DNA of 64,000 nt from Paraphysomonas bandaiensis (taxonomy: Eukaryota; Protista; Chrysophyceae): assembly GCA_965644295.1 (NCBI GenBank), contig CBFFRP010000357.1, positions 62,001-126,000 on the forward strand, read 5' to 3'. Below the pieces are notes generated by a model that made no database searches, was not told the DNA's origin, and saw only the letters and a list, made by a program, of their open reading frames with translations. The position numbers and the translations under genes were made by a program. Each line of letters begins with the position of its first letter. Within the stretch, counting starts at the first letter, position 1. Of this stretch, positions 49,596 to 61,665 are shown one piece after another.

Positions 49596-50624
49596 CTACT
49601 GTAACTTGAGTCCAACTACTTCTTTTACAAGATTCGGAATAAGTGTAATAGCGTAGAGCGGGTTATTTCGGAAAAATGAGTACGGCACGAATTCAAATAC
49701 GGATAGTGACACTGCAGTTATATTCGGTAGATACTCTACACGGTGCCAGGTCCATGTAGGTACATAGAGAATGTCTCCCTTTTCTGTGATGACTTCATAA
49801 CGAGGCACACCAGAGAGAGCATTTGGGTCCACTGGGTCAAGAGAAGAATAAAAGTATGCCCGACCATCTGGAGACACAGTTGGTCGGAGAAGATGAGAAT
49901 ATTGAGGTTCAACTAAGGTCCATGTCTTTCGACCTTCAGTCTGCACTACCAGATTCGCTATAGGCTCACAGTGCATATCAGTGCGTGTTGTACTTGCCAA
50001 ACCACCAGTGCCTGAACCACGACTCATAAATACCGGTGACGTAACAGTAACCCCAAGCGCCCGCCAAATGCGGGTTCGCGTCTCACCGAATACATCTCTC
50101 ATCCATTCAATGTTTTGGTCCACCAACCTATGAATCACATTTGGGTTGCTGCGTACGATTTTTTGAGATCCAAATTTCTCAACTCCTCCGGACAATATAT
50201 TACGAACAACCGTAGCCAGTGGCCCTTTGGCATCTGGAACTGTATTATGTTCGCGCGCATCTCTGAAATAATCAATCACTAGTTCGCCTAAAGGAGGCGA
50301 CAGCATATCATCAATAGACAAAACGTTCTCTACTGATGCATTTTTAATAAGAATCGGCTTTGAGATATCAATACCACTTAAATCCTCTCCTATCGTATAC
50401 AGAGGGATGGGAATAATGTTATCTGAAGATAATAGAGAGGTGCGAGAGTGCTTGTTCTCCCATGTATACCATATCTCTCTCTCCCGTTGAGACATATCAT
50501 ACCTGCCGCTGCCCACCACTGATCGGATGCATTGAATCAATGACCACTGAGCGGAGTCAGTGAATAACAGCCACGCGAGAAGGAGAGTTGATAAAGATAC
50601 TGCTATCTGCAGGCGTATCGACAT
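49596..50624 (-). CDS. JmjC/cupin-8-type 2-oxoglutarate Fe(II) oxygenase with N-terminal signal or anchor
   Basis: TDMHCE...VQTEGRKTWTL...GDILYVPTWTWHRVE gives an H-x-E...H triad. Confidence 0.85.
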   Translation of the reverse strand: MSIRLQIAVSLSTLLLAWLLFTDSAQWSLIQCIRSVVGSGRYDMSQREREIWYTWENKHSRTSLLSSDNIIPIPLYTIGEDLSGIDISKPILIKNASVENVLSIDDMLSPPLGELVIDYFRDAREHNTVPDAKGPLATVVRNILSGGVEKFGSQKIVRSNPNVIHRLVDQNIEWMRDVFGETRTRIWRALGVTVTSPVFMSRGSGTGGLASTTRTDMHCEPIANLVVQTEGRKTWTLVEPQYSHLLRPTVSPDGRAYFYSSLDPVDPNALSGVPRYEVITEKGDILYVPTWTWHRVEYLPNITAVSLSVFEFVPYSFFRNNPLYAITLIPNLVKEVVGLKLQ

Positions 50625-50685: not shown

Positions 50686-51037
50686 TATGTATGTATGTAT
50701 GTATGTATGTATGTATGTATGTATGTATGTATGTATGTATGTATGTATGTATGTATGTATGTATGTATGTATGTATGTATGTATGTATGTATGTATGTAT
50801 GTATGTATGTATGTATGTATGTATGTATGTATGTATGTATGTATGTATGTATGTATGTATGTATGTATGGCTGTATGTATGTATGTATGTATGTATGTAT
50901 GTATGTATGTATGTATGTATGTATGTATGTATGTATGTATGTATGTATGTATGTATGTATGTATGTATGTATGTATGTATGTATGTATGTATGTATGTAT
51001 GTATGTATGTATGTATGTATGTATGTACGTATGTATG
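50686..51037. repeat. (TATG)n microsatellite, ~350 bp, between divergent genes
   Basis: Array with two small interruptions, near 50870 and 51028. Confidence 0.99.
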
Positions 51038-51217
51038 GTCTATGCTCAGTGCTTGTGGTGTGGTGTGATGTGTTAGGGTATGGTATGTATACTGTGTAGA
51101 GTGTGTATGGCGCACTACATGCATATATATATATACACAACTCGTTAAGTAGTGCTGTTATTATTATCCATTCGAACTCATATATACAACACAGCGAGCC
51201 TTGCTACCCGCTATCCC

Positions 51218-52371: not shown

Positions 52372-53792
52372 TTAGATATTAGCTGCGTTGTCTTCTGATG
52401 GTTCCCTGGCCACTACCGCATTATTGCTCTGCTTGCATTCGTCACGGGAGGGTGATTCAGAGGGCACTTGAGAATATTGCGCTGCTGCAGATGAAGCAGC
52501 TTTTTGATTTCCTTGCAATTCTTCATCTGAACCAGCATCATCATTGCCGGACTTCGCCATCTCCTCATCCTCACCATCTCCTGGAGATATCTGCGAGCCA
52601 CTAGCTCCATTAGCAGGAATTTCTAGCTCAGATCCGCCCCCAAATGATTCATTTTTCTGAGAAAAATCAGGGTAAAACGTCTCCATCATAAATCAACACA
52701 CCTTTTTGGCTTTCATATCTCGTTTCTCGGCAGCCTGCTGTTTCTTTTCCCTTTGCCTCTTGGATTCGAGCACTATGAAGTCGTACGTAGTTATACCTTT
52801 GTACACTGTGTGGAGTTATATTAGACATTTCGCATGGAACATAACCACAGTGGTTTTTGCACCAATAGCAACATGACAAAATGTAAAGCCAACCATATTC
52901 ATGCTATTACCTAGCATGCAGTGAAATCCGGCCAGCTGGTATATAAGTCCCACTAGAAGTACTAGCACTGCGACCGAAAGTATAAGCAGAGCGATCACGC
53001 TCCACATGCCAAGAGTGCTCCTCAAGAGTGCAGAAGATGATACTGCATATCATACAACAAGAGTAAGAATACGCGAATAAACACATACTTAAATCACGCA
53101 AAGAGATAACAACTGACACGTAGAACGCAGCTGAAATACGATTCAGCACACAGTACATGCGCATTCTACTAACTTCTATCCAGGAATCTCCCTCGCGATG
53201 TAAATGATTCCACTAAGAAGTAGATGGAGAAAAATAGACAAATCGTAGTCATGACCCCCACTCCACCGACCAAAATTAGAAAGTACCTAAGTTTAGGCAG
53301 TTCACATACAGCAAATATCATGACAAAATTAAACGTACTTGTAATTTTTCTCCCCAATGCATGTGTTTAACCATTTACAATGATGATCGAATCGTTTTAC
53401 ACACTTATCGCAGAATCTGCAATGCTTGCTCGTATTGTGCCTGTTATTTATTTGAACATCAATACAATGTTACACCACAGCCTGTGTACTTACACATTAA
53501 CCTCGCAGAGATAACAATACACATCTGAATCGCAGTGCGCTGCATCTTTCGTCAAAGAGTCGTCCGCCGGGTCAACAGCACATGTTACATATCCTGCCCA
53601 GGCAGATACTATGGATGCTACAATAAACACTACTGTGATGGGGACTATTACTGCGTGAATTCTCCACATTAGAGGCATTATAAATAAGAAGTAATGGAGT
53701 AGAATCACAGGAAACAATAACCAAGTCGCAACTTGTAATGGATGATAAGGATATTCCAATCCATTTATTCGACGTTCATCTCCTGAAGGCAT
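52372..53792 (-). CDS. DHHC palmitoyl acyltransferase, multi-exon
   Basis: The exon at ~53342-53441 reads [32 protein letters not shown]-terminal [14 protein letters not shown] plus TMs; acidic tail. Confidence 0.93.
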
Positions 53793-54504
53793 ATTAATGA
53801 TAAGATCTACAGGTACACAGAGCTATAAGTCGTTTGTCATATATAATAACTTGTATTGATTGAATATAATAGAGAGATAGAGCCACCGTTATGATTGTAT
53901 ATAACAGTTAACGCATACTTGTGTTGGCTCTCAACTGTTGCTGTATCAACACTAACATATTACTTTATGTTGTGATGTACTTGCTCTATGGTCATATGCA
54001 GTACATTGCTGTCGTCTCGGTCCAAATACAAGTAACACACCACGTACAGCAGTACATGTCCAGTACCACCATATACAGCAGTACTCCCCAAGAGCCTACA
54101 GATGTATGCCATATGGCTATACTGTATGGTATATGTGCATCTACACCATCTACATCACAACCACCTACAGTACCTCCCACCTATCCGTACCTGGCTACAT
54201 ATACACACACTATCCCAGTACAGTCTATATATATCTACCTCCTACATATACAGCAGTGTATGATAGAAACTAAAAACTGAAAATACGTGGTGTCTATTGG
54301 ATCCATATGTCCACTACGTGTTTTGCCGTTTCAAAGTACTGTACAGCAGGAGTGGGTGTGTGTGTATGTTCATAGGCTCCTGCACTCTGATCGGATCTGT
54401 GTCGCTAGTTACTGTTGATCTCTATATAAACTGCTCTTCCAATAGAGTGAATAGAGTATTAGAACAACAAGTGTGTGTTTATGATATGGTGATATTAGAA
54501 TCGA

Positions 54505-57296
54505 ATGCCTAATGCTGTAGTTCCAATAAACAACGAATTCGTAAGTTAACTATATAGTGATGCGTATACATGACTCGGCTGATATATATATACTCTTATA
54601 GATGCAGGCGTTACAAGTCGAAGAACCCCATCATTATGAGCGACCAAAGCGCCATCATAAATCCATTAAGAAGAGAGTATTTGAGTTTATGGACTCTGTG
54701 CCGATGCAATTGTTTCTTGGAGTGCTGCTGGTGCTGTCCCTCTTCTTACCTGATATATGGATATTGAGCAACGCGTCTTCGGACTCTGATGCAGCTCTAT
54801 TCTCTGTATTACTGGCTGTATTTATAGTATTTATATTAGAAACTGTCATCTTAACGGCTGTTCAAGATGATTATTTCTTGAGTTTCTTTTTTTGGATGGA
54901 TTTTATCGGTACACTATCGATAATTCTCGATATTGGGTGGATCGCAGACTCCTTCATGCCCGACAATACTGCCGCACAAAAGGGCTCGCTTCTTCGGGCT
55001 GCAAGAGCTGCGAAACTTGGGGCTCGTTATGGGCGTCTGATGAGGCTCTTAAAGTTGATGCGTTTCTTTAAATTCCTCCCTTGCTTCAAACAAGAGGAAG
55101 ATGCTGAACCCGAGCCCACAATGTCTGCTGTGCGGAAGGTCTCCTCTGAGCTGTCATCAGTTCTCTCTCGTCGTGTGGCCGCACTAGTTATGCTTATTGT
55201 TATTGTAGTCCCTTTCTTGGACTATAATATTGTAGACAAAAGCGTGGATGCTTGGTTGACTAATTTCAGAAGAGTGGCTTTCGACAATACAACCACCACA
55301 GAAGACCTGGACAGCATGGCGAAAAAGTTTCGTCGCTTTTATCACACTGAAGCCCTTACTCCTTTACAGCTTACAATAGAGACTTCTCATTTGCCTCTGT
55401 TCAATGAGCACTATTCTCAGGGTTACAAGCTTAGAACGGACAATAAGGTCCTTTACGAAACGAGTTACATCGACGACGACGAAAAGTACTGGGTGCGCGT
55501 CAAGATGAATCGCACTGTTATCCGCCAGTGGGATGCGTTTTTTGGAATAATGCTCATTATCCTTGTCATTGTTGTACTGGTTGGGTTTTCTGCTTCATTT
55601 CAGAATTCTGTCGACGTTCTAGTGGTTGTACCTCTCGAGAAGATGATGAACACTCTAAGACGCAGCGCGACCGCAATGTTGAAGAGCATGCAGGCCATGG
55701 ACAAAGAAGATGAGGAAAATATGATGGGTGAGAATAGCGACCTGGATCAAGAGCTAGAAACCGCTGTTCTCGAGAAGATGGTGGAGAAGTGTGAGTAATT
55801 TTTCTGTCGTTAAATTTGAAATTTATGACATTATTCGTGCAGTGGCCAGAATTGTAAAACACGTGACCAACGATAACGATTTGGTAGTGGACGAAAATGT
55901 GGATAGTGCAGTGGCAAGTTGGCTCACCCAGAATTACGCTGGTGGCGCTGCGAGAAAGCGCAGTGCTATTGTGAAGGATCACTTGGATTTATCGGATGAA
56001 GAGCAGCAGAATAAACTCAGGGACCTTCACAAAACTGTAGACCCGAAGATCGTGAATAGCTGGAATTTTGATGTTTTGAAATACGATTATGACCAGCTAT
56101 TTGAGTATAACCGATACTTGTTTGATGTTTTCAATGTGTTCGCTCAATTCGACATCCCAGTAGATGTGATGAACGCCTTCATGCAGGAGTTGTCGACAAG
56201 GTACATCAAGGACAACACTTACCACAACTTCCACCATGCATGTGATGTAACGCAAACCACCTACCGTCTATTGATGGTCTCCAAAGTTCATATTGCTTTA
56301 AGTGATTTGGAGGCATTTTCTATGCTCGTTGCGGCTATGGGACATGATGTGGGGCACCCTGGAGTAAATAATGCATTCCTGGTGAAAACCCGCCACGACC
56401 TGGCCATGCTTCACAACGACAAATCTCCGCTAGAGAATATGCACTGCTCACTCCTCTATGAGCTTTTCCGTAGGCCGGAGCTCAATATAATGGTAGGATT
56501 ACCGGATGCTCAGTGGCGTGAGTCCAGGAAGATTATCTTGTCACTTATCTTGGGGACAGATATGGCCCACCATTTTGATCAAGTGTCTAAGACTCAGGTG
56601 ATGTGCTCATTGCAGCATACGTATTATATAGTGTAACTCGAATATATTAATATACCTTTTCGTTTATCTCACTATGCGTGTAGCTATTTCTGGAGGTCAA
56701 TGGGGAGGATGTGAAGAAGTTTTGCTATGGACACAAGGACACAATTGAGTGCTTTGGAGAGGAGAAGAATAGAATTTTTATCATGGAGCTCTTTCTGCAT
56801 TGCGCCGACATTTCGAACCCCTACAAACCCTTTGAGATATGTGCACAGTGGGCAGATCTAGTTTCGCAGGAGTTCTTTTCCCAAGGTGACAAGGAGAGAG
56901 CCAGTGGTATGGACGTCTCTCCCATGATGGACAGGGAGACATCTAATTTGTTTAATATGCAAATGGGTTTTATTGAGTTCGTGGTATCTCCTCTTGTGAA
57001 TAGTAAGTATCTTTGTACTTTATGAAAATGTGTAATCGGCGCCCGCAGCTGTTGTAACCCTCTTCCCACCGCTGAAGGAAACTGGCGAGATGATGCTCTC
57101 GAACTACATCCAGTGGGGTGAGAAGCGCAAGGATGAGATTCGCGGGACAGTCGACATGGCTGCTGACAAGAAGGACGAGGAGGTGAAGAAAGTGGATGAT
57201 CGCATCAGTAAATTTAAGGATAAGATGGCTTTCCTTAGTAACATCGTCGAGGCTAAACGAAAGCACTCCTCAGGGAGTTTGGCCTCCAATAAGTAG
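54505..57296 (+). CDS. Voltage-sensor-domain membrane protein fused to a class I 3',5'-cyclic nucleotide phosphodiesterase
   Basis: Exons 54505-54540, 54602-55790, 55843-56597, 56684-57002 and 57049-57296 splice in frame. S4-like RAARAAKLGARYGRLMRLLKLMR. PDE motifs YHNFHHACD, HDVGHPGVNN, LENMH, TDMAHH, HCADISNP, EFFSQGD and QMGFI. Confidence 0.92.
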
Positions 57297-60115: not shown

Positions 60116-60280
60116 CTGGGGGTGGTTTTTCATCGATTTGTTCATTGTTTATTTCATTGAAAAATCATCGTTTTTTCATTAAAACGTCAATTTTTTTCAC
60201 TTTTCACTGAAAAAACGATGATTTTTGGATGATATAAATGATAACAACTCGACGAAATCGATATGCACAACCACCCCCTG
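60116..60280. mobile_element. MITE-like foldback element
   Basis: Outer inverted repeat c(t/a)gggggtggtt...atcgattt / aaatcgat...aaccaccccctg and inner inverted repeat aaaaatcatcgttttttca / tgaaaaaacgatgattttt. No clean TSD. Confidence 0.55.
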
Positions 60281-60309
60281 TTCCATACACTGTGTGATAG
60301 TGTACCTCT

Positions 60310-60627
60310 ATACATACATACATACATACATACATACATACATACATACATACATACATACATACATACATACATACATACATACATACATACATACATA
60401 CATACATACATACATACATACATACATACATACATACATACATACATACATACATACATACATACATACATACATACATACATACATACATACATACATA
60501 CATACATACATACATACATACATACATACATACATACATACATACATACATACATACATACATACATACATACATACATACATACATACATACATACATA
60601 CATACATACATACATACATACATACAT
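60310..60627. repeat. (TACA)n microsatellite, ~320 bp, between divergent genes
   Basis: Perfect array. Confidence 0.99.
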
Positions 60628-60687
60628 GCATGCATCGGATCATATAGTTCATGGACTCAGATAGTCATTCTATTATGTGGTCATAGG

Positions 60688-61665
60688 ATGGATCAAGAAA
60701 TTATCTCTCTTCTACATGAACCTCATCTATACACATGGTTAGAAATCGCTTTCTTAATCGAAGGCAAGAGGCCTCTATTGCATATTGATGAGTTCAATAC
60801 AGCAGCCAGAGAGGCTTATGTACATAATAACAGTAATCTACAAACAGTTTTAAATATTAAAACCAATTCTGATATATCAAATAATCCACAAATTGTATCA
60901 TTTGTTTTGGGTAATTTAAAGAAGAAAAAGAAAGTGAATTGTTTGGGTACTGCACTGGTTGCTTATCTGATAGCTCATGCTAATGGTATTGGTTGTACAA
61001 TGCATTGCTCTGAATCTCATAGTTGGATTGAGACAATAGATGGTACAAAGATTGATGTATTGAGTAATATAAAAGCTGCGCAGAAATCATCACTACCTCT
61101 ATCGATATATGAAAATTGTCGACAAGTGGATTCGTTTGGCATGTGTATGCTGATAATAACTAATGACAACTCCCTCTCGGATGAAATGGAGTTTAATATT
61201 TTGCACCATTATAGAGATAAACTTAAACATTCCTGGGAATTCTCGAAGTTATTTTCATTGGGGGTGGAGTATAATCATCCTGATGTGGGACTGTCGTTGC
61301 TAGACCGTGATTCTAACAGCATTGAGCTCAGTATTCTACGGACCCTGTACTACATCAATGAGGAAGAAGATATCCAATTGTCATTAGAGCAAATGAATCA
61401 GTTACTGCATATGGTGACAGAACTTTGTGAGCGATGCAATATAAACTCGGACATATTTCTGTACCCGAAATCTAGTTTAATGTTCCTGGCTGAGGAGTTT
61501 GTGTCCACGTTTACGGGGCAGATGGAGGCTGCGTCTGGATATGAGGATTGGACTGAAGCCGCGGCATGCATATGTAAAAAGTACCTCCCAAGCACATATG
61601 ACAAATTTTACAAAGCATTACCATGTCTTAGCGGTAAGCGTAGGAGAATAGAAAAGAAACAGTAA
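60688..61665 (+). CDS. Menin-like / transglutaminase-fold protein with basic NLS-like segments
   Basis: 325-aa ORF. VNCLGTALVAYLIA...MHCSESHSWIE...KIDV resembles the menin block LD[SC]xGVAFAVV...HLALSEDHAW. KKKKK and GKRRR basic clusters. Confidence 0.6.
   Translation: MDQEIISLLHEPHLYTWLEIAFLIEGKRPLLHIDEFNTAAREAYVHNNSNLQTVLNIKTNSDISNNPQIVSFVLGNLKKKKKVNCLGTALVAYLIAHANGIGCTMHCSESHSWIETIDGTKIDVLSNIKAAQKSSLPLSIYENCRQVDSFGMCMLIITNDNSLSDEMEFNILHHYRDKLKHSWEFSKLFSLGVEYNHPDVGLSLLDRDSNSIELSILRTLYYINEEEDIQLSLEQMNQLLHMVTELCERCNINSDIFLYPKSSLMFLAEEFVSTFTGQMEAASGYEDWTEAAACICKKYLPSTYDKFYKALPCLSGKRRRIEKKQ

What the first reader, a model, noticed from the sequence alone, without database searches (positions are those of the whole stretch)
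54505..57296. Candidate voltage-sensing cyclic-nucleotide phosphodiesterase (S1-S4 module fused to a PDE)
Seen: one cleanly spliced ORF with four N-terminal TMs. These carry acidic counter-charges (LFLPD, FILE, FWMDFIG) and a periodic basic S4 at ~54995-55066 (RAARAAKLGARYGRLMRLLKLMR, 8 basic residues). A fifth TM, a ~100-aa loop, a sixth TM and the linker LVVVPLEKMM...LETAVLEKMVEKL precede a class I PDE domain with all metal ligands and the invariant Gln. No GYG filter is visible. Established: this six-TM layout and linker resemble the ion-channel-like adenylyl cyclases (ACalpha type) of Paramecium, Tetrahymena and Plasmodium. Voltage sensors can also gate enzymes, as in the Ciona voltage-sensing phosphatase. 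Inference: the same sensor chassis here drives cAMP/cGMP breakdown rather than synthesis, forming a membrane-potential-controlled off switch. I know of no characterised example but cannot search for one.
Basis: partly seen in the sequence, partly recalled or inferred. Interest (0 to 1): 0.92.

Follow-up and report, generated by a model that had tools for sequence, protein, structure and literature searches.

The report
Voltage sensor fused to phosphodiesterase
A marine flagellate, and many other protists, make one protein that joins an intact voltage sensor to an enzyme that destroys the messengers cAMP/cGMP; I found no study of this pairing, and it may let membrane voltage switch these signals off directly.

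Summary
Confirmed. A five-exon, 848-aa Paraphysomonas gene. RNA contigs show all four introns spliced, and one contig spans sensor and enzyme. A transcript-derived protein (MMETSP1103) matches exons 2-5 at 99.6-100%. S1-S4 folds like the Ciona phosphatase voltage sensor (Z 12.0). The S4 arginines and counter-charges are 92-100% conserved, and the class I PDE keeps every catalytic residue checked. The membrane module is homologous to ACalpha-type 'ion-channel' cyclases. In a tree of that module, PDE carriers and cyclase carriers fall on opposite sides of one branch (SH-aLRT 100). Sensor-PDE relatives occur in ochrophytes, dinoflagellates, prasinophytes and Perkinsozoa. New here: there is no pore. 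TM5-loop-TM6 models as a small alpha/beta domain resembling bacterial Cache sensors (Z about 8, tied with an unrelated fold), followed by HAMP-like helices. ACalpha's claimed GxG pore motif sits at the fusion joint and is absent from all 185 long PDE members. Best reading (0.6): a voltage-regulated PDE; voltage control is untested. No description found in open-access literature, apart from one unremarked supplementary row. The scan noted a sensor-PDE earlier on another piece of this genome (s1-439122).

The parts
54505..54540 (+). Exon 1 (12 codons, start ATG)
   Evidence: orthologue P0234 begins with the same peptide start
54541..54601 (+). Intron 1 (61 nt, GT..AG)
   Evidence: joint in runs X1 and X2
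54602..55790 (+). Exon 2: whole membrane module (S0, S1-S4, TM5, loop domain, TM6, two helices)
   Evidence: 100% identical to P0315
54698..55069 (+). Voltage-sensor domain S1-S4; S2 Phe/Glu at 54830/54839, S3 Asp at 54899
   Evidence: AF2 pLDDT mostly >90 in S1-S3, about 70-80 in S4; VIA Z 12.0 to Ci-VSP sensor 4g7v, 131 of 136 residues; conservation
54995..55063 (+). S4 with 8 basic residues, three-residue period with one break at a conserved Gly-Ala
   Evidence: first six basic positions 92-100% identical in 82-86 homologues; highest-conserved region of the family
55151..55219 (+). TM5, continuous with an amphipathic S4-TM5 helix
55241..55510 (+). About 90-aa loop domain (2 helices, 4 strands), by topology extracytoplasmic; Cache/PDC-like, not a pore loop
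   Evidence: model pLDDT 92.5; dCache/PDC Z 8.1 over 128-135 of 146 residues, tied with ribosomal uS3 Z 8.8 over 88; no K-channel pore listed
55514..55600 (+). TM6
55613..55865 (+). HAMP-like element: helix 1 with invariant Pro, acidic variable connector, helix 2 (spans intron 2); region of Pfam PF26726; fusion joint shared with ACalpha
   Evidence: no Pfam HAMP hit
55791..55842 (+). Intron 2 (52 nt, phase 1)
   Evidence: joint in 4 runs of 4 studies
55843..56597 (+). Exon 3: linker and N-terminal half of class I PDE (Tyr/His 56220-56237, HD 56343-56348, Glu 56433, His 56442)
   Evidence: Pfam PDEase_I E 4e-46
56598..56683 (+). Intron 3 (86 nt)
   Evidence: joint in 4 runs
56684..57002 (+). 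Exon 4: PDE C-terminal half (metal Asp 56807, Asn 56816, invariant Gln 56960, Phe 56969)
   Evidence: Pfam E 2e-29
57003..57048 (+). Intron 4 (46 nt)
   Evidence: joint in 4 runs
57049..57296 (+). Exon 5: end of PDE, C-terminal helices, stop
   Evidence: 100% identical to P0315 residues 756-836

Best explanation
A membrane-bound class I cyclic-nucleotide phosphodiesterase whose activity is set by membrane potential. Shown: one polypeptide; S1-S4 sensor fold with conserved S4 charges and charge-transfer residues; no pore; intact catalytic site; module shared with ACalpha-type cyclases. Inferred: S4 movement is passed through the conserved S4-TM5 helix to the TM5/TM6 pair. In a dimer, the two helices after TM6 form a HAMP-like four-helix bundle that repositions the two PDE domains, as N-terminal dimer helices regulate other class I PDEs (own knowledge). 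The likely role is to shape cAMP/cGMP pulses in flagellar behaviour, opposite a voltage-linked cyclase. Substrate is probably cAMP or both. Polarity is unknown; the long S4 with a mid-helix Gly break recalls hyperpolarisation-activated sensors (speculative).
For: Single spliced transcript. Best structural match of S1-S4 is an enzyme-coupled sensor, Z 12.0. S4 and S3 are the most conserved regions, 0.78 and 0.76 against 0.61 for the PDE domain, and the two post-TM6 helices match the PDE's conservation (0.62, 0.68). All 67 aligned full-length members keep 7-11 basic S4 residues. 82 of 88 long representatives carry a PDE. 11 of 12 strain differences are synonymous. The Paramecium cyclase responds to hyperpolarisation (PMC12414865), and an oomycete sensor-cyclase sits on a flagellum (PMC12223298).
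Against: No functional data exist. The stretch between the second helix and the PDE core is poorly conserved (0.32), so tight coupling is not evident from sequence. No dimer or full-length model was made. The HAMP-like label has no profile support and the connector is long and variable. Voltage control of recombinant ACalpha itself is unproven (PMC10651576).
Confidence: 0.6

Rival explanations
1. A receptor-PDE: the main input is an outside ligand, ion or pH sensed by the Cache-like domain and passed through TM6 and the HAMP-like helices as in bacterial sensors; the voltage sensor only tunes or gates this.
For: TM-domain-TM-two-helix layout; many chemoreceptor and histidine-kinase sensor domains among the fold matches; Atlas matches to kinase/HAMP sensor clusters over this half, TM 0.47-0.57 by the match; invariant Asp and Arg in the loop domain.
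Against: The loop domain is the least conserved folded part (0.32); Z about 8 is tied with ribosomal uS3; no Pfam Cache hit in 82 members.
Confidence: 0.17
2. The membrane module only anchors, targets or pairs the enzyme (for example with an ACalpha-type cyclase in the flagellar membrane); the PDE is constitutive.
For: Many protist PDEs have transmembrane regions with no defined regulation (PMC10865986); variable linker before the PDE.
Against: An anchor does not need S4 arginines and counter-charges kept at 92-100% across lineages.
Confidence: 0.15
3. The protein conducts ions (through the sensor as in Hv1, or as proposed for ACalpha) and the PDE is a secondary or flux-controlled domain.
For: ACalpha was proposed to carry a K+ conductance with a GXG motif after TM6 (PMC3283738); some sensors conduct ions (PMC10651576); S1 has a conserved acidic residue.
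Against: No pore fold between TM5 and TM6; no TxGYG-type filter in 221 PDE-bearing sequences; the ACalpha GxG motif is in 117 of 121 long cyclases but 0 of 185 long PDEs.
Confidence: 0.08

Closest known systems
ACalpha-type voltage-sensor adenylyl/guanylyl cyclases (Paramecium, Tetrahymena, Plasmodium ACalpha; Phytophthora PPTG_13136/13761)
   Same: Homologous module from S1 to the second post-TM6 helix; predicted-structure TM 0.71-0.74 over about 350 residues; same C-terminal position of the enzyme.
   Different: Class I PDE instead of class III cyclase; no GFGxAG motif; separate branch in the module tree.
Voltage-sensing phosphatase (Ci-VSP/TPTE)
   Same: S1-S4 sensor (best structural match, Z 12.0) in one chain with an enzyme, no pore.
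   Different: VSP links S4 straight to a PTEN-like domain; here two more TMs, a loop domain and helices intervene, and the enzyme is a PDE.
Rhodopsin-phosphodiesterase of choanoflagellates (own knowledge; I recall PDB 5vyd and 7d7p, hit, as its catalytic domain)
   Same: Membrane sensor fused to a class I PDE through dimer helices.
   Different: Light sensor (rhodopsin), unrelated membrane domain.
Bacterial TM-Cache-TM-HAMP sensors
   Same: Layout and approximate fold of the TM5-to-linker half.
   Different: No sequence-level support; preceded by a voltage sensor; eukaryotic PDE output.
PDE4 and apicomplexan transmembrane PDEs
   Same: Catalytic domain closest to PDE4 among solved structures (E 3e-55); membrane anchoring as in apicomplexan PDEs.
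   Different: No sensor module in PDE4; a review of apicomplexan PDEs never mentions voltage or ion-transport domains (PMC10865986). I did not align their TM regions.

Membership tests
Class I cyclic-nucleotide PDE (PF00233) | Pfam score above cut-off | tested here: met
   158 and 103 bits for exons 3 and 4, cut-off 24.8
Class I cyclic-nucleotide PDE (PF00233) | Metal ligands, catalytic His, invariant Gln and Phe clamp | tested here: met
   All present and aligned to PDE4A; invariant or >=90% in 67 members
Class I cyclic-nucleotide PDE (PF00233) | Hydrolysis and cAMP/cGMP preference | not testable with these tools
   Asn equivalent to PDE4D N321 is kept, but cGMP-specific PDE9 also scores E 5e-47
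Voltage-sensor domain | Four-helix S1-S4 fold | tested here: met
   Z 12.0 Ci-VSP, 11.3 Nav1.7, 10.5 Kv4; Foldseek gave no E<=1e-3
Voltage-sensor domain | Periodic S4 basics and S2 Phe/Glu, S3 Asp charge-transfer residues | tested here: met
   (alignment to Nav domain IV S4)
Voltage-sensor domain | Pfam Ion_trans above cut-off | tested here: inconclusive
   19.6 bits against cut-off 25; 29 of 82 members hit, best E 2e-7
Voltage-sensor domain | Gating charge movement | not testable with these tools
   Needs voltage clamp
ACalpha-type cyclases | Homologous six-TM module and linker | tested here: met
   Cyclases among exon-2 hits at E about 1e-25 to 1e-27
ACalpha-type cyclases | Class III cyclase domain and GxG motif after TM6 | tested here: not met
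Six-TM voltage-gated ion channels | Pore helix and filter between S5 and S6 | tested here: not met
   Alpha/beta domain instead; no filter motif
Cache/PDC sensor domain | PAS-like alpha/beta fold between two TMs | tested here: inconclusive
   Z 8.1, tied with uS3; no profile hit
HAMP domain | Post-TM helix starting at Pro, connector, second helix; dimeric four-helix bundle | tested here: inconclusive
   Pattern present and conserved; no Pfam hit; dimer not modelled
Voltage-sensing phosphatase | PTEN-like phosphatase directly after S4 | tested here: not met

The most novel reading that the evidence does not exclude
The module is a voltage sensor grafted on a two-component-style receptor (TM, Cache-like domain, TM, HAMP-like helices) with swappable outputs. 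Protists use a cyclase form and a PDE form as a push-pull pair that turns voltage, possibly together with an outside ligand, into cyclic-nucleotide level. ACalpha would then be a voltage-sensing enzyme rather than a channel, its 'K+ pore' motif being the helix-to-cyclase joint.
Probability: 0.3. Interest if true: 0.92.

Novelty: new variant of a known kind. Interest (0 to 1): 0.8.

Why it matters
A 2023 review that draws all proteins reported with a voltage sensor has no phosphodiesterase (PMC10651576, zero mentions). A voltage-controlled PDE would be a third class of voltage-sensor enzyme after the phosphatases and the ACalpha cyclases, and the first for messenger breakdown. It is widespread in flagellated plankton. 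It also makes an old question testable: whether ACalpha is a channel or a voltage-sensing enzyme, since the PDE form has the same module without the claimed pore motif. It could serve as a tool for coupling voltage to cAMP/cGMP in cells.

Tried and rejected
Gene-model artefact or two separate genes: rejected by RNA joints, one bridging contig and full-length transcript proteins. Pseudogene: rejected (no stops, 11 of 12 variants synonymous). K+ channel pore: rejected. Sequence search of exon 2 against PDB gave nothing; profile searches gave only weak Cav/Nav/Kv sensor hits and noise for the loop. Foldseek gave no significant hit. No phage match. No NCBIfam match. A prokaryote scan with the PDE-family pattern found no relative (one exact pattern only, weak test). 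Ten paper searches found no description of a sensor-PDE; subscription journals are mostly not covered. A loose motif count suggested PDEs with the GxG motif; a stricter profile-based recount showed none. The exons were joined only inside scripts to check frame and map coordinates. No full-length or dimer structure was predicted.

Full report
Gene and host. The locus is a five-exon gene on the + strand, 54505-57296, encoding 848 aa without internal stops. RNA contigs from four studies show introns 2-4 as GT..AG joints; intron 1 is seen in two studies. One 2355-nt spliced contig runs from 54425 to 56978, i.e. from before S1 into the last part of the PDE. Contigs cannot show expression level, and two of the four runs are only guessed to be RNA, but spliced joints do not arise from genomic DNA. 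Database protein P0315 (MMETSP1103, taxid 36769 = Paraphysomonas, a chrysophyte) is 836 aa and matches exons 2-5 at 100, 99.6, 100 and 100%. Of 12 differences between window and RNA contigs, 11 are synonymous. The fusion is real, transcribed and under purifying selection.

Enzyme. Exons 3 and 4 score 158 and 103 bits on Pfam PDEase_I. The closest solved structures are PDE4 catalytic domains (E 3e-55). The catalytic His, the four metal ligands, the Glu/His of the second metal site, the invariant Gln and the Phe clamp are all present and nearly invariant in 67 full-length members. Substrate preference cannot be read from this.

Sensor. An AlphaFold2 model of exon 2 (mean pLDDT 85.5) gives an N-terminal helix, S1-S4, TM5, an alpha/beta domain, TM6 running into a long helix, and a short second helix. 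S1-S4 aligns best to the Ci-VSP voltage sensor (Z 12.0, rmsd 3.5, 131 of 136 residues), then Nav, CatSper, Kv and Cav sensors. By sequence the signal is weak: Ion_trans 19.6 bits, below cut-off. The first six S4 basic positions are 92-100% identical among about 85 homologues, and the S2 Phe and Glu and S3 Asp are 99-100%. S4 and S3 are more conserved than the PDE domain itself. That is the main argument that the sensor works.

No pore. Folded alone, TM5-loop-TM6 is confident (pLDDT 92.5). No channel pore domain is listed among its matches. The best are ribosomal uS3 (Z 8.8, 88 residues) and bacterial dCache/PDC sensor domains (Z 8.1, 128-135 of 146 residues), with many more chemoreceptor and kinase sensors below. 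This is a tie at a middling score, so 'Cache-like' is a lead, not a result; no Pfam Cache or HAMP family hit any of 82 members. After TM6 come a conserved helix with an invariant Pro, a variable acidic connector and a second conserved amphipathic helix, a pattern like HAMP domains (own knowledge). The Atlas structure search also returns kinase/HAMP sensor clusters for this half at TM 0.47-0.57 by the match.

Family. Exon 2 matches 2140 clusters at 50% identity. Of 88 long proteins among the best hits, 82 carry a PDE and 4 a cyclase. Named PDE carriers: Ochromonas danica, Ochromonadaceae CCMP2298, Epipyxis, Chattonella, Polarella, Cymbomonas and Pyramimonas; an Atlas cluster of 279 PDE + PF26726 proteins is commonest in Perkinsozoa among few with records. 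Most members are unnamed environmental sequences, so the range is a lower bound.

Relation to ACalpha. PDE and cyclase forms align from S1 to the end of the second helix and diverge right there. Whole-module predicted structures match ACalpha clusters at TM 0.71-0.74. The GFGxAG motif, the proposed K+ filter after TM6 of ACalpha (PMC3283738), lies at that joint: present in 117 of 121 long cyclases, in 0 of 185 long PDEs. An unrooted tree of the module alone (85 rows, 365 columns, quick IQ-TREE LG+G4) needs one label change between 51 PDE and 34 cyclase rows, SH-aLRT 100. This fits a single old effector swap, but the tree has no root, rows were thinned at 55% identity, 22 cyclases were drawn at random, and the two sets came from separate searches. 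Direction is not shown. Cyclase forms also exist in Poribacteria genomes.

Literature. PMC12223298 describes sensor-cyclase proteins in Phytophthora, notes the missing pore helix and flagellar location, and has no mention of phosphodiesterase in its main text. Its supplementary homologue list holds one row, Saprolegnia SDRG_11877, auto-annotated as phosphodiesterase and not discussed; I could not check its architecture. PMC10651576 lists known sensor-bearing proteins with no PDE. Direct phrase searches returned nothing. The architecture is visible in databases as PF26726 + PF00233 but appears undescribed in the open-access library; subscription papers were not searchable.

Mechanism and verdict. 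Most likely (0.6) voltage moves S4, the movement passes through the S4-TM5 helix and TM6 to a dimeric helical bundle, and this sets PDE activity. Steps after the sensor are inference. Rivals are a ligand-driven receptor-PDE (0.17), a passive anchor (0.15) and an ion-conducting protein (0.08). It is not a member of ACalpha, VSP or the voltage-gated channels, but is built like ACalpha with the opposite enzyme. The scan noted the same design on another piece of this genome (s1-439122); I did not see that sequence and do not count it as support. Novelty: new variant of a known kind. Interest 0.8.

Noticed in passing
L002:3719-6424, L003:3806-6415, L005:3743-6424, L004:103-2520: Bacterial ACalpha-like genes (voltage sensor, same module, GFGEAG, cyclase motif) in three Ca. 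Poribacteria MAGs on 74-122 kb contigs and one unnamed bacterium; in L002 the gene lies between a sugar-binding protein and an ABC permease, and the others show a similar ORF layout. They form one well-supported group in the tree.
   Followed up: partly
P0156 (L006:132-6869), P0161, P0204: Three divergent 2245-2345 aa proteins join cyclase domain(s), ankyrin repeats, the sensor module and a PDE in one chain; P0131 and P0199 have ankyrins before the module. Hosts unknown.
   Followed up: partly
window 55109-55789 (Atlas search): About 380-aa Spirochaetota Ion_trans clusters resemble the module by language-model features (0.84-0.88, lead only); possibly an enzyme-less form.
   Followed up: no
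window 55076-55087: A Leu-Pro-Cys-Phe motif just after S4 is 70-93% conserved in close homologues; possible acylation site.
   Followed up: no
window 53490-53792 (-): Divergently transcribed neighbour that looks like the start of a DHHC palmitoyltransferase by eye; this exon alone had no Pfam hit.
   Followed up: partly
window 49596-50624 (-): 342-aa JmjC/Cupin_8 protein with a hydrophobic N-terminus.
   Followed up: partly
window 60688-61665 (+): 325-aa ORF with no Pfam match.
   Followed up: partly
window about 50690-51070 and 60230-60630: Long (ATGT)n-type microsatellites that produce spurious ORFs.
   Followed up: no
window 56949-56979: RNA contigs break at a 31-mer of higher depth near the invariant Gln, suggesting a paralogous or allelic PDE transcript sharing this word.
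   Followed up: no
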